DNA of 64,000 bases, from positions 186,001-250,000 of the forward strand of contig NW_027271191.1 in NCBI RefSeq assembly GCF_040938485.1, in the 5' to 3' direction. Position 1 is the stretch's first letter. Every line of letters begins with the position of its first letter. This DNA comes from Diadema antillarum (taxonomy: Eukaryota). Both the position numbers and the translations under genes were made by a program. Shown here piece by piece: positions 38,221-49,702 of this stretch. A model generated the notes under the pieces. The model made no database searches. It worked only from the letters and a program-made list of their open reading frames with translations, and had not been told where the DNA came from.

Positions 38221-41200
38221 TCAGGCCAAGTCCTCTTCTTCCTCCTCCTCGTCAAACTCTCCCTCCTCCTCAGCGGTGGCATCCTGGTACTGCTGGTACT
38301 CAGACACCAAGTCATTCATGTTGCTCTCAGCCTCAGTGAACTCCATCTCGTCCATGCCCTCACCAGTGTACCAGTGGAGGAAAGCCTTTCGCCTGAACAT
38401 GGCAGTGAACTGCTCCGAGACTCGCTTGAAGAGCTCCTGGATGGCTGTGCTGTTGCCGATGAAAGTGGCAGACATCTTGAGACCACGTGGTGGGATGTCA
38501 CAGACGGCGGTCTTGACGTTGTTGGGGATCCATTCGACGAAGTAGCTGCTGTTCTTGTTCTGGACGTTGAGCATCTGCTCGTCAACCTCCTTCATGGACA
38601 TGCGGCCACGGAAGATGGCAGCAACGGTGAGGTAGCGGCCGTGACGGGGATCGCAGGCTGCCATCATGTTCTTGGCATCGAACATCTGCTGGGTCAGCTC
38701 TGGAACGGTCAGGGCTCGGTATTGCTTACTTCCTCGGCTGGTAAGCGGGGCAAAGCCAGGCATGAAGAAGTGAAGACGGGGGAAGGGAACCATGTTGACA
38801 GCCAGTTTACGCAGATCAGCATTGAGCTGGCCAGGGAATCTGAGGCAGGTGGTGACTCCACTCATGGTGGCAGACACAAGATGGTTGAGATCACCATAGG
38901 TTGGGGTGGTCAGCTTGAGGGTACGGAAGCAGATGTCGTATAGGGCTTCATTGTCGATGCAGTAGGTCTCATCTGTGTTTTCAACCAGCTGATGGACGGA
39001 AAGAGTAGCATTGTATGGCTCAACAACAGTGTCTGATACTTTGGGTGATGGCACAACGCTGAATGTGTTCATGATGCGGTCTGGGTACTCTTCACGGATC
39101 TTGCTGATGAGGAGGGTTCCCATTCCGGAGCCAGTTCCACCACCAAGAGAATGTGTCAGCTGGAAGCCCTGGAGAGGAGCGTATGATGATGATATATTAT
39201 AACATTTTTGTGTTATCATATATTTTTCTAAGAATTCATTTGTCATTCTCCTCGTCTGGGTCTCTACTGGGTATGTTTCTGCTCATCCTTTTATTCTCCA
39301 TAACATAGTGCAAAATTAGATTGTTGCCGTAGTACTATCAAGAAGGTGATACTTTAATTGGTCAGAATAAGAACAAAAGACATGCATCAATCTTCGTTGC
39401 CTGTATTGTTTCTTTATCAATGTTTCTTCATCCAACATCGATGTGGATATAGATACATCGAATTAATGACGGATATATTGGCAATGTATATACCTGTAGG
39501 CAATCACAATCTTCCGCTTCCTTCCGGAGTACGTCGAGCACATTGTCGACCAGTTCGGCTCCTTCCGTGTAGTGACCCTTGGCCCAGTTGTTTCCTGCTC
39601 CGCTCTGGCCGAAGACGAAATTGTCCGGTCGGAAGAGCAGGCCGAACTCTCCTGACCGGACGGAGTCCATTGTCCCGGGCTCCAGGTCAACGAGGATCGC
39701 CCGTGGAACATACTTGTTACCTGCAATACGGTACCATATAGGTGGAAAGAACATGTTAAATGAAAATGGGAAAGATGTCCAGTATCTATTCAACATGTCG
39801 CCGACAGACATCATTATTATTATAACTACAGTATATTTGAAGTCAAACATCAGTGGCGGATCCAGAGGGGGGGGGGGGGGCGCAAACGGCGCACGCCCCC
39901 CCCCTTTATTTTTCGTGAAAAACAAAAGAAATAAAAAGAAAAACAATGAAATGAAACCCGGAAGTGGCACCAGAAATATTAGTCATGTGAAAATAGAGAA
40001 TGCAGTAAAAGTGCCGTGTAATATACGGAAGTTATTTTCTTATCTTATTTATGTAATTATACAGTCATTATCTATGTAGACTGTTCATGTATTTTGTCGC
40101 GATTATGTCATTATCAAAGTCAATTGTACTCATTGTGAATTTACAACAGTCAGATCGATCTTCTTATACGACCAAAACTATAGAATCAAGAATGGAGTTC
40201 TGTGAAAACCTTCATGTATATCCGAGCAGGGGCTTTGCTTTGCATTATTTGCTATGGAATACTGCGAAAACCTTTATGCATTTTTCATCTGCATGAGGAT
40301 GATTGGTCTTTCAAATATGTTTTAAGACGTGTGAAATCAAATTCAGTATCTCGTTATGAAACTTTGGATGTCAAGAGATCACAGTCCTCGTCGAAATCAC
40401 AACGCGAAGCTGAAATTCTCTAGAAGATTCTTTACACTTGAGGGACTTGTGATTCAAGAACGCTCTATCAATAATCTCAATAAAGATCATTGATTCCATA
40501 TTATATTATGTCTTCAGTACGATAAATCAGTACATTTCGAATGTGCCGATCTTTGAGCATCACGCACTCCTGACCACTTGTACACATTTGCCCTCAGTGC
40601 TTGAAATGGTTTCATCTGAAAAGATTTGCATAACAGAACATACGACACCGTTCAAAAGCAGAAAGGGGGGGGGGGGGGAGAAAGAGGGGAAAGAGGATGC
40701 ATAAGAGCGGGAGATAAAGGTCAGATGAAAAACAACATCAAGAACAACTTCTCACGCAGCCCTGCGGTTGACGGTACGAGTAGAAGTCTCGTTCTTCTCA
40801 CTTGTGATAGTCACGAGCCACACAGTGTGGAGTTTGAAAAGGCAAACAGCGATCCCTGTTACCTATAAAGAACTTTGGACTTCCCTATTCAGTCACTTGT
40901 AAAAACATCGGTTATACATTCTCCTTTGTGATTCAGCCTTTTGTTGACTTTGTCGGCATATTATTTTTTTTCGCGTATTTCCCTTTTCTCGCTTCCTTTG
41001 AGATGTGACGATGGCATATTACTACTTACCAGATGCCTCCGAGTAATAGACGCTGATCTTGTCCAACTGCAGGTCTTGTTCACCATGATAGGCTCCCGTA
41101 GTGTCAATGCCATGCTCGTCCGATATGACTTCCCAGAACTGGATGGTTTAAGAAAATTGAATCATTCCTTATTAATTTCAAGATGAATAATCATAGCTCC

Positions 41201-47200: not shown

Positions 47201-49702
47201 TTGAGCTGTTTCAGTGGTAGCCAAAACAAAGAAATACATTAAAATAACACAGTCATGCAAAGTTGTGTGATACTGATGACTGACTGCTATGTACTAAGAT
47301 CTAGTGACAAGAACATAATATTAAGAAAAGAAAAAAAAAGTATCAAGGCAGAGTTGAGGAGGGGGGGGGGAGTAGAGGAGAAAGGTAGAGAGGGGGGGGG
47401 GGGTAGGGAGGGGAAGGGGAGGGAGGAAGAGATCTGACACAATACAAGATACACAATACAAGATTAACACAGTCATTCAAAGTTGTGTGATACTGATGAC
47501 TGCTATTTACTAAGATCTAGTACCACCGCAAGAACATAATATTAAGAAGAGAAATTGTAGCAAGGAAGAGTGGGGGGGGGGGGGGGAGTAGAGGAGAGAG
47601 GTAGAGGGAGGGGGTAGGGAGCAGAAGGGGGAGGGAGGAAGAGATCTGACACAATACAAGATACACAATACAAGAAGTCATTCAAAGTTGTGTGATACTG
47701 ATGACTGCTATTTACTAAGATCTAGTACCACCGCAAGAACATAATATTAAGAAAAGAAATTGTAGCAAGGAAGGGGGGGGGGGGAGTAGAGGAGAGAGGT
47801 AGAGGGAGGGGGAGGGGGGTAGGGAGCAGAAGGGGGAGGGAGGAAGAGATCTGACACAATACAAGATACACAATACAAGAAGTCATTCAAAGTTGTGTGA
47901 TACTGATGACTGCTATTTACTAAGATCTAGTACCACAAGAACATAATATTAAGAAAAGAAATTGTAGCTAGATAGAGTTGGGGGGGGGGGGAGTAGAGGA
48001 GAGAGGTAGAGGGAGGGGGGGGGGGGAGTAGGGAGGAGAAGGGGGAGGGAGGAAGAGAGATCTGACACAATACAAGATCAACATAAACCAGCAGAGCTTG
48101 TATAGGATGAATACTTCCCATAGACTTGCATGTATTGCGTGCATTCTCTATAGGGCTCACACGGGTAAATAATTCCCCATAGAGACGTGTGTTAAAATTT
48201 AAATTTCAAAAAATTCTGTAAAATAGCTGGGAGAAATGAGGTGTTTCATCTTCACTAACCTGAATAAGTGAGATATTACCTTTCATCCATCAGATTGCCA
48301 GGGTGGGTTGTTCTGCTCTAATTCTGTCCTGGGGTCCGCAAAGCCAGACTACGAGTTCTTGTCACTCAAAAAATCACCTATTTTCCGTACACGTACCCAA
48401 TGAAATATAGTCCCCTCAAATTCCATCAGAAAAGCTTTCATCTTCCAACCAAAATGCAGTTTGTAGAGGAATTCATACTCAATATCTACAGCTATTCAGT
48501 TTTTTTGCCAAACTACATCATTGATTTTTAATTAATTTTTTTCTTCATTTATTTTGGTATCTTTGGTACGAATTTGTGAAGGGGTCTGGGACAGTCCATT
48601 TTATTTACAGGTGTGAGCCCTATACGGCACTGTTTTCTTCGCGTCGAATGGCAATAATAATGAAGTTGAATTCTAAATTCCTTTCATTAAATTTAATTAA
48701 CACTAATTGTTGTAAAACGAATATGGGCTAAGTTGTCTTCTTAGAACAAGGTCTTCAATAATCACTGCACAATAGATGTTCCTGATGGACCAAGCTGCAG
48801 ATAAAGCCTAAATAAAGCATATTGGTTGCCTAACCTCCTCATACTAGAGTTAGGCAAATAAATCAAAAAAGAAATAAAGTTTCATGATGATTAATATCTG
48901 AAAGGGATGATACAGTTTTGGTTGAGGTGGAGCTTCAGGTTTCCAACGCTTTTCGATAATTAGTTTGTTTTTTTTAGATAATCAGAGACCTCTCGTGGAA
49001 TATGAAATAGGATAATAACAATTCTAAGAAGAATTCAAAGATTATTATTTTGATGAAATTTGGTTTTGAAATGACTGAGATATCCAAAATAAAGCGATCC
49101 TAAAGGTGGGGCCCACCTTGGTATAATAATGACAAACTAAAAAACGACTAATGAGCATGAGACAGATGTAAAATTGATTGTTCCTGTTCATAATCAGCTG
49201 TGCAAACAAAAGCACTACAAAATAGTAAACGAGCTGAAGAGCCGTCAAAGGCGTCTTTTATTTCTCTTTAAAAAAAAATCGGTAAACAGCCAGCGGCATT
49301 TCTCTCAGTCTTATGAACGAACTAACATCATTTTCTGAATAAAATTTTTGGTGACATGACATTTGTTCCTGCGAAAATTGTTCCTGTCTTATTTTCTCCA
49401 AGGACTTAGGGTTAGGATTGTGATAATATTTATTAGGATGCAGTAGGGTTTTAGGTGATAGTTTGATGTCAGGATTAGGATTGGGTGAGGGTTATGTTTG
49501 TTGGAGCAATCGGAGAGAATGTTATGGAACCGAAATTTTCAGATAACCAGTTGATAGGATTTGCAAATAAGCATCATCGCCTCTATTGGAGACGCCTATG
49601 GTATTGAATACCTCCTTGGAATTGACGGACAGGGAATAAACTAACCTTTGCGCCAATCTGGTTTCCACACTGGCCGGCTTGAATGTGGACAATCTCACGC
49701 AT
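38221..49702 (-). CDS. TUBB: Beta-tubulin C, divergent isotype, 446 aa, 4 coding exons
   Basis: Exons 49702-49646 (57 nt), 41138-41030 (109), 39720-39494 (227) and 39168-38221 (948); all GT-AG and phase-compatible; tail [16 protein letters not shown]. Confidence 0.95.
41813..42376. mobile_element. Harbinger-like MITE in tubulin C intron 1
   Basis: TIR AAGGGCTTTTTACACTTG / CAAGTGTAAAAAGCCCTT; internal CTTAGCCCC and AGTCCCGTAC repeats. Confidence 0.75.
44132..45360 (+). mobile_element. Helentron-associated non-autonomous element, family 2
   Basis: 5' GCTCACCTGAG and 3' CTCGGGTGAGC subTIRs, (CGTC/CGTG)n tract, three ~320-345-bp tandem units (44278, 44600, 44945), 3' hairpin GACCCGCGGGTC, T-run ends. 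Confidence 0.8.
45801..46074. mobile_element. Palindromic TA-flanked MITE
   Basis: TA-CTCTCTAAAAAAAA ... TTTTTTTTAGAGAG-TA; whole element folds back; GAGTGAA/TTCACTC repeats. Confidence 0.85.
46185..46768. mobile_element. CACTA/EnSpm-like MITE
   Basis: TA-CACTGCAAAAA ... TTTTTACAGTG-TA with many AACACC/GGTGTT subterminal repeats. Confidence 0.8.
47245..48078. repeat. G-rich tandem repeat, four units of ~205-220 bp
   Basis: Units start near 47248, 47469, 47676 and 47882; each has AAAGTTGTGTGATACTGATGACTG, G-runs and CTGACACAATACAAGA. Confidence 0.92.

What the first reader, a model, noticed from the sequence alone, without database searches (positions are those of the whole stretch)
38221..49702. 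Beta-tubulin C is a mosaic of a divergent 5' third and a converted last exon
Seen: 17 amino-acid differences from B in residues 1-131 (P32T, T35A, D39E, S40Q, E45D, R46K, N48S, N52S, T55S, G57N, V64I, P80E, Q83L, I84L, S115N, V120L, S126D) with heavy synonymous divergence. There are only 2 differences (Q279K, I381V) from residue 132 to the tail, with about 20 nucleotide differences in ~900 nt. The switch falls at the intron after codon 131. Inference: an ancient isotype whose last exon is repeatedly overwritten by A/B, or an exon-level recombinant.
Basis: partly seen in the sequence, partly recalled or inferred. Interest (0 to 1): 0.75.

Follow-up and report, generated by a model that had tools for sequence, protein, structure and literature searches.

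The report
Partly converted divergent beta-tubulin gene
One of three neighbouring sea-urchin beta-tubulin genes keeps an old, strongly altered front third, but its large last exon has been copied over from its neighbours; this is a clean but ordinary example of partial gene conversion.

Summary
Gene C (49702-38221, minus strand, 4 exons, intact) differs from neighbour B at all 17 listed residues in codons 1-131. From codon 132 to the tail it differs only at Q279K and I381V.

Synonymous difference (pS) drops from 0.71-0.79 in codons 1-131 to 0.10 in codons 132-441. The change point lies 3 nt from the exon 3/4 boundary (Fisher p 3e-29).

The near-identical tract is C 39171-38238. No intron or 3'UTR similarity exists.

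Beta-tubulin genes from two unidentified outside organisms show pS about 0.6 to A/B in both parts, so the last exon has no special silent-site constraint. In the last exon C shares 24 of 27 A/B-derived bases; in codons 20-131 it shares 9 of 19.

All 17 replacements are derived in C. C keeps an intron in codon 56 (phase 1), as in Xenopus; A and B lack it.

Two short relic islands (38704-38734 and 38404-38422) are as diverged as the front exons and hold the only two replacements.

Best reading: ectopic gene conversion from A/B onto C's last exon. "Repeatedly" and "ancient isotype" are not shown, and no C orthologue was found.

So neither the mRNA nor assembly continuity was tested.

The parts
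49646..49702 (-). Gene C exon 1 (codons 1-19, [19 protein letters not shown])
   Evidence: GT donor follows. 8/57 nt differ from B, all silent.
41139..49645 (-). Gene C intron 1 (8.5 kb; A has 797 bp, B 933 bp)
   Evidence: gene model. No similarity to the A/B introns.
41030..41138 (-). Gene C exon 2 (codons 20-55 plus the first base of codon 56); 9 of the 17 replacements
   Evidence: 24/108 nt differ from B.
39721..41029 (-). Gene C intron 2, inside codon 56 (phase 1). Absent from A and B; same place and phase as in Xenopus tubb3 and in the outside gene on L003.
   Evidence: G|GT AAC; Xenopus T|CA; L003 G|GA.
39494..39720 (-). Gene C exon 3 (rest of codon 56 to codon 131); 8 replacements
   Evidence: 54/228 nt differ from B, pS 0.78.
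39169..39493 (-). Gene C intron 3 (325 bp, phase 0 after codon 131). Unlike the A/B intron apart from the last 3 nt; no N.
38221..39168 (-). Gene C exon 4 (codons 132-446 plus stop)
38238..39171 (-). Tract 97.6% identical to B (28105-27172) and 97.4% identical to A: the inferred converted stretch
   Evidence: 934 nt, 22 mismatches, no gap.
38704..38734 (-). Relic island 1 (CDS nt 828-858, codons 276-286, M-loop): 7 C-only differences in 31 nt (23%), including Q279K
   Evidence: site list; clustering permutation p 5e-5; Q279 invariant in 30 beta-tubulins.
38404..38422 (-). Relic island 2 (CDS nt 1140-1158, codons 380-386): 4 C-only differences in 19 nt (21%), including I381V
38221..38237 (-). 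End of the acidic tail plus stop, not homogenised (C ...EEEEEEDLA against A/B ...[10 protein letters not shown])
27152..29951 (-). Gene B (3 exons: 29951-29895, 28961-28626, 28102-27152), intact; likely donor type
19145..21679 (-). Gene A (3 exons: 21679-21623, 20825-20490, 20096-19145). Same protein as B, except that one extra T at 20085-20086 shifts the frame.

Best explanation
C is an old tandem paralogue of A/B, and its large last exon was overwritten by non-reciprocal copying (ectopic gene conversion) from an A/B-type neighbour.

Shown: the discontinuity, the limits of the tract, and the shared derived bases.

Inferred:
- The copying ran across the whole exon and stopped where homology ends. 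That is 3 nt into the unrelated intron 3 on one side, and at the differing tail codons on the other.
- Two short patches (codons 276-286 and 380-386) escaped, through patchy repair or separate tracts, and perhaps because K279 and V381 are kept by selection.
- Exons 1-3 escaped because they are already about 22% diverged and are cut into 57, 109 and 227 bp pieces by introns. This leaves no long identical stretch to start an exchange. Selection for the 17 C-specific residues may add to this.
- The direction was A/B to C. The last-exon protein of all three genes equals the outside genes' state, whereas C's own lineage changes protein quickly where it is not overwritten.

A and B are homogenised in the same way, most strongly at the 3' end.
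For: - pS between C and A/B is 0.71-0.79 in codons 1-131 and 0.10 in codons 132-441; the break is at the exon boundary, p 3e-29.
- The tract is limited to 39171-38238, and introns and UTRs cannot be aligned.
- The outside gene O (L003) has pS 0.60-0.69 to A/B in the front part and 0.61 in the last exon. Silent sites of the last exon are therefore free to change.
- Taking O = E1a as the ancestral state, the last exon has 24 bases derived in A, B and C together, 3 in A/B alone and 4 in C alone. Codons 20-131 have 9 shared, 7 in A/B alone and 28 in C alone (7 silent, 21 replacing).
- The islands are 21-23% diverged, like the front exons, and their clustering has p 5e-5.
- Outside the islands A-B differ by 0.8% and A-C and B-C by 1.2%.
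- The codon-56 intron is kept by C and lost by A/B.
- All three genes lie in tandem in the same orientation within 31 kb.
Against: - No C orthologue and no second species with the whole cluster could be obtained, so the classic test (paralogues grouping by species in the tract and by gene outside it) was not run.
- The organisms behind the outside genes are unknown.
- The tree-shape test does not reject an A+B+C group for the front exon (AU p 0.35). The contrast is therefore one of depth, not of proven different branching.
- No reads could be laid, so the assembly join and the 4-exon mRNA are unverified.
- A tract that fits an exon so exactly could also come from a cDNA intermediate.
Confidence: 0.78

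Rival explanations
1. Assembly artefact. The last exon and 3' flank of another beta-tubulin copy were joined to the front of C, with the assembler switching copies inside or next to the 97%-identical exon.
For: The exon is 934 bp of near-identity to two neighbours. Gene A carries a 1-nt indel that may be an assembly error.
Against: - No N lies between 38221 and 49702; the only N run is at 32054-32194.
- C's exon 4 is neither A nor B: it has 18 private differences spread over CDS nt 528-1227, its own tail and its own 3'UTR.
- The switch in similarity sits exactly at a splice acceptor after a unique 325-bp intron, not inside the repeat.
- Two DNA runs of the same organism label hold 68% of the sampled words of 38000-41300. 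This shows presence, not continuity.
Confidence: 0.07
2. A single exon-level recombinant: one unequal crossover or exon shuffle fused the front of a distant beta-tubulin gene to the back of an A/B-type gene.
For: The boundary falls at an intron. Divergence in the parts of the exon between the islands is uniform at 0.6-0.9% C-only differences, which fits one event.
Against: A crossover would also carry the A/B tail, 3'UTR and downstream DNA, but similarity ends 17 nt before the end of the stop codon. The two internal islands with front-exon-like divergence need patchy or multiple exchange. A double exchange inside one exon is a conversion in all but name.
Confidence: 0.08
3. No exchange at all: the last exon simply evolves very slowly at silent sites in this lineage (codon bias, mRNA structure), so old paralogues still look alike.
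For: GC3 is higher in the last exon (0.68-0.72) than in the front part (0.57-0.64). In the 3' tree the Diadema branch is shorter than the outside branches.
Against: - Outside genes differ from A/B at pS 0.61 in the last exon, the same as in the front part.
- C shares 24 of 27 A/B-derived bases there, which is shared change and not shared retention.
- The islands reach 21-23% divergence inside the same exon.
- In another organism two paralogues show the reverse pattern: 7.7% in the front exon against 14.5% in the last.
Confidence: 0.05

Closest known systems
Concerted evolution of beta-tubulin paralogues by ectopic gene conversion in Leishmania (Jackson, Vaughan and Gull 2006, PMC1533823)
   Same: The coding sequence of beta-tubulin paralogues is homogenised within a species while flanking non-coding regions stay distinct. 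The paper infers ectopic conversion.
   Different: There whole coding regions of intron-less genes at three loci are involved, and the case rests on cross-species trees. Here only the last exon of one tandem gene is affected, bounded by an intron and by the tail codons, with relic islands and no cross-species tree.
Partial conversion with islands of divergence held around selected sites, as modelled for human RHD/RHCE (from my own knowledge of Innan 2003; not read here)
   Same: A converted stretch is interrupted by short, highly diverged patches that contain the amino-acid differences.
   Different: Selection on K279 and V381 is not shown here; patchy repair alone could leave such islands.
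Sea-urchin beta-tubulin family as surveyed in Paracentrotus lividus (Ragusa et al. 2019, PMC6539552)
   Same: A and B match it: three exons, introns after codons 19 and 131, 447 aa, and the peptides [39 protein letters not shown] and [13 protein letters not shown].
   Different: C has a fourth exon (an intron in codon 56). It also differs in each of those four peptides, which most or all of the seven P. lividus genes share; none of the exceptions listed there matches C.
Vertebrate class III beta-tubulin as a divergent isotype (review PMC7464520)
   Same: Its substitutions gather in the H1-S2 and H2-S3 loops, helix H3 (positions 124 and 126) and the S7-H9 M-loop (275), and it has its own tail. 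C changes residues 32-57, 80-84, 115-126 and 279, and also has its own tail.
   Different: The residues differ and the origin is independent: all C changes are derived within this lineage. No functional data exist for C.

Membership tests
Interlocus (ectopic) gene conversion between tandem paralogues | An abrupt, statistically supported change in divergence along the aligned paralogues | tested here: met
   86/393 against 22/930 differences. The maximum chi-square break is at CDS nt 390, with 0 of 2000 shuffles reaching it and Fisher p 3e-29.
Interlocus (ectopic) gene conversion between tandem paralogues | Flanking non-coding DNA is much more diverged than the tract, so the duplication is older than the tract suggests | tested here: met
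   blastn finds no intron or UTR similarity between C and A/B. The tract ends 3 nt into intron 3 and 17 nt before the end of the stop codon.
Interlocus (ectopic) gene conversion between tandem paralogues | Against an outgroup, the paralogues share derived states inside the tract but not outside it | tested here: met
   Last exon: 24 shared, 3 in A/B alone, 4 in C alone. Codons 20-131: 9 shared, 7 (+3) in A/B alone, 28 (+3) in C alone. The outgroups are unidentified organisms.
Interlocus (ectopic) gene conversion between tandem paralogues | Different tree shapes for tract and non-tract partitions | tested here: inconclusive
   ML trees put C on a 0.43 branch in the front partition and a 0.021 branch in the last exon. 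However, the AU test does not reject an A+B+C group in the front partition (p 0.35).
Interlocus (ectopic) gene conversion between tandem paralogues | Across species, tract sequences group by species while non-tract sequences group by gene | not testable with these tools
   No C orthologue was found by word searches, exact look-ups or metagenome patterns.
Beta-tubulin (Pfam PF00091 plus PF03953) | Full-length similarity to beta-tubulins, MREI start, GGGTGSG motif and an acidic tail | tested here: met
   Exon 4 is 96-99% identical to named beta-tubulins carrying PF00091 and PF03953. The translation shows [15 protein letters not shown] and the tail.
Deuterostome-type beta-tubulin gene structure | An intron after codon 19 and an intron in codon 56, phase 1 | tested here: met
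   Present in C, in Xenopus laevis tubb3 on L001 and in the outside gene on L003. A and B lack the codon-56 intron.

The most novel reading that the evidence does not exclude
The parts of C that resist homogenisation may be the two mating faces of the lateral bond between protofilaments. One face is the H1-S2 and H2-S3 loops plus H3 (residues 32-57, 80-84, 115-126). The other is the M-loop island holding K279, at a position that is invariant Q in 30 other beta-tubulins. On this reading, selection for a co-adapted, isotype-specific lateral interface (for example for a special microtubule array) blocks conversion exactly there and lets it erase everything else.
Probability: 0.2. Interest if true: 0.6.

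Novelty: new member of a known kind. Interest (0 to 1): 0.35.

Why it matters
The locus shows, within one gene cluster, how gene conversion and divergence share a gene. The catalytic and C-terminal body of three beta-tubulin genes is kept uniform, while one copy has built a new N-terminal surface and its own tail.

This matters in practice for anyone building tubulin trees or naming isotypes in echinoderms, because whole-gene trees of such mosaics mislead. It also marks a candidate specialised isotype (17 derived changes plus K279) for expression and microtubule-lattice studies.

The mechanism itself is textbook.

Tried and rejected
- **Protein word search with exon 4:** flooded by vertebrate and insect tubulins. 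Clustering at 90% identity hides echinoderm proteins.
- **Word searches scored on C exon 3:** the best hits share at most 3 of the 8 C-specific residues. P0248 and P0249 (95% identical) are from a different kind of organism: they have no introns at codons 56 or 131, and carry GFQITHS and TGAGMG.
- **Exact look-ups of the exon-4 ORFs of C and B:** nothing on record.
- **Two degenerate C-specific DNA patterns in JGI metagenomes:** no match.
- **Read laying on 37400-41400:** Local sandbox comparisons did include the whole exon; one search was a protein-level tblastn of B against the window. I therefore repeated the key numbers on codons 132-399 only, with the same result.
- **AlphaFold model of a generic beta-tubulin for mapping loops:** mean pLDDT 36.9, not usable. 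Loop assignments rest on PMC10519996 and PMC7464520.
- **Tree-shape (AU) tests:** inconclusive. My second constraint was badly chosen and says nothing.
- **The full spliced C protein** has no reference, so it was never used as a query.
- **The names of the organisms** behind ERZ26052287 and ERZ26222911 could not be found.
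Full report
**What is there.** The window holds exactly three beta-tubulin genes and no other tubulin fragments. All lie on the minus strand within 31 kb.
- A: exons 21679-21623, 20825-20490, 20096-19145.
- B: exons 29951-29895, 28961-28626, 28102-27152.
- C: exons 49702-49646, 41138-41030, 39720-39494, 39168-38221.

Every intron has GT-AG ends. B (447 aa) and C (446 aa) are intact. A encodes the same protein as B except that one extra T at 20085-20086 shifts the frame. 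A and B have introns after codons 19 and 131. C has these two and a third inside codon 56, phase 1. Earlier notes of this scan name the genome as the sea urchin Diadema antillarum; I did not verify that.

**The observation.** From residue 132 to the tail only Q279K and I381V differ, and the last few tail residues also differ ([10 protein letters not shown] against EEEEEEDLA).

At the nucleotide level B and C differ as follows:

| Codons | Differences | pS |
|---|---|---|
| 1-131 | 86/393 (21.9%) | 0.71 (A-C 0.79) |
| 132-441 | 22/930 (2.4%) | 0.098 |

The best break by maximum chi-square is after CDS nt 390, three bases from the exon 3/4 junction. None of 2000 shuffles reached the observed value, and Fisher p is 3e-29.

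**Limits of the tract.** blastn finds the high-identity stretch only between C 39171-38238 and B 28105-27172 (934 nt, 22 mismatches, no gap), and likewise for A. It starts 3 nt inside intron 3 and stops 17 nt before the end of the stop codon, so the tail end and the 3'UTR stay distinct. The introns and UTRs of C and A/B cannot be aligned. A single crossover would have carried the downstream DNA along, so the exchange was non-reciprocal and internal.

**Slow evolution or shared history?** I obtained three outside beta-tubulin genes of unknown organisms from ENA assemblies.
- O is on L003. It has a B-like protein and introns after codon 19, in codon 56 (phase 1), after codon 131 and in the tail.
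- E1a and E1b are on L004 and L005. Both are of the three-exon type.

O differs from A/B at pS 0.60-0.69 in codons 1-131 and 0.61 in the last exon. Silent sites of the last exon are therefore as free to change as the rest.

Taking sites where O and E1a agree as the ancestral state gives these counts:

| Partition | Derived in A, B and C together | A/B alone | C alone |
|---|---|---|---|
| Last exon | 24 | 3 | 4 |
| Codons 20-131 | 9 | 7 (plus 3 where C changed differently) | 28 (7 silent, 21 replacing) |

C thus shares 89% of the A/B lineage's changes in the last exon, against about half at most in the front exon. Per site, its private changes are about 19 times rarer there. The likeness is therefore shared change, not retention.

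Silent private changes in the front exon are equal on both sides (7 and 7), so nothing suggests a raised mutation rate in C. ML trees show the same contrast as a branch length for C of 0.43 against 0.021. The AU test does not reject an A+B+C group in the front exon (p 0.35). The contrast is therefore in depth of coalescence, not in proven branching order.

**Relic islands.** The 18 C-only differences in exon 4 are clustered.
- Seven lie in 31 nt (CDS 828-858, window 38704-38734) and include Q279K.
- Four lie in 19 nt (CDS 1140-1158, window 38404-38422) and include I381V.

A permutation test for the first cluster gives p 5e-5. These patches are 21-23% diverged, the same as exons 1-3. Outside them A-B differ by 0.8% and A-C and B-C by 1.2%, which is nearly a star. 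The whole of C was therefore probably once about 22% diverged. One event or a few, at about the time A and B were last homogenised, then overwrote the exon and left two patches. Repeated overwriting is possible but is not shown.

**Age and nature of C's front part.** The codon-56 phase-1 intron sits at exactly the place and phase found in Xenopus laevis tubb3 and in O. It is therefore ancestral and was lost in A/B. In P. lividus all seven surveyed beta-tubulin genes lack it (PMC6539552).

All 17 replacements are derived in C. O, E1a and E1b carry the B residue at 15 of the 17 positions and have their own variants at 84 and 120. B is 127-128/131 identical to generic animal beta-tubulins, whereas C is only 112-116/131 identical. 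The peptide table in PMC6539552 shows that none of the seven P. lividus proteins has C's states around residues 46, 62, 86, 282 or 380. C is therefore an old but lineage-specific, fast-changing isotype, not a widely shared ancient class. The ratio of replacement to silent change is still well below 1 (pN 0.078 against pS 0.71), so the front third remains under constraint.

**Direction and mechanism (inferred).** The last-exon protein of A, B and C equals the outside state, while C's own lineage changes protein quickly where it is not overwritten. This favours A/B as donor.
- The tract stops where homology stops.
- Exons 1-3 are short (57, 109 and 227 bp in C), separated by introns, and 22% diverged. 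This leaves no long identical run to start an exchange.
- A and B show the same process more mildly. Their pS falls along the gene from 0.43 to 0.31, 0.075 and 0.044. Their introns and UTRs are otherwise unalignable, but near-identity reaches 25 nt into the intron before the last exon, and weaker similarity reaches about 75 nt.

**Possible meaning of what escaped.** The lateral bond between protofilaments is made by the M-loop entering a lock formed by the H1-S2 and H2-S3 loops of the neighbour (PMC10519996). The M-loop is the S7-H9 loop and includes residues 274-282 (PMC7464520). C's changes lie at residues 32-57, 80-84 and 115-126 and, in island 1, at 279. Position 279 is invariant Q in 30 other beta-tubulins. 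Vertebrate class III shows a similar spread of changes (PMC7464520). Selection for a matched interface is an attractive reading, but it is untested; my structure model was too poor to use.

**Limits.**
The 4-exon mRNA and the continuity across 39168-39494 therefore remain unverified.
- No N lies inside the gene, and C's exon 4 is neither A nor B. A mis-join is therefore unlikely, though not excluded.
- No C orthologue was found.

**Verdict.** It is best explained by partial ectopic gene conversion within a tandem tubulin cluster. That mechanism is known: beta-tubulin concerted evolution was described in Leishmania (PMC1533823). This is a new example, with neat exon-bounded limits and two relic islands.

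Noticed in passing
window 20085-20086 (gene A, start of last exon): A reads CAGCTTGACAC where B and C read CAGCTGAC. The extra T shifts the frame at codon 135, yet the 313 downstream codons have no replacement against B. This is an assembly indel, a very young pseudogene, or a copy kept alike by conversion.
   Followed up: partly
window 19141-21684 against 27148-29956 (genes A and B): A and B are themselves old duplicates under homogenisation. Their pS falls along the gene from 0.43 to 0.31, 0.075 and 0.044. Introns and 3'UTRs are unalignable, apart from 25 near-identical nt (and about 50 weaker nt) before the last exon.
   Followed up: partly
L004:1615-3337 and L005:158-3955 (ENA ERZ26222911): Two three-exon beta-tubulin paralogues of another, unidentified organism show the reverse mosaic: 7.7% difference in the codon 20-131 exon but 14.5% in the last exon. 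The contigs have 1-3x coverage, and L004 has two indels.
   Followed up: no
L003:5933-9429 (ENA ERZ26052287): A beta-tubulin gene with a B-like protein has five exons. It keeps the codon-56 intron and has an extra intron after codon 431 that splits off the acidic tail.
   Followed up: partly
   Followed up: no
window 13080-13864 and 58703-59337: Two copies of a repeat carrying an ORF with SVRPS-type repeats and a chance 'MREIV' start lie on either side of the tubulin cluster. This is probably a dispersed mobile element.
   Followed up: no
window 25652-27151 (downstream of gene B): No AATAAA or ATTAAA occurs within 1.5 kb after B's stop codon. A has several, and C has one at 679 nt.
   Followed up: no
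window 41139-49645 (C intron 1): The intron is 8.5 kb, ten times that of A or B. It has a 4-nt-period simple repeat near 46565-46608 and strong G-over-C skew from 46 to 50 kb.
   Followed up: no
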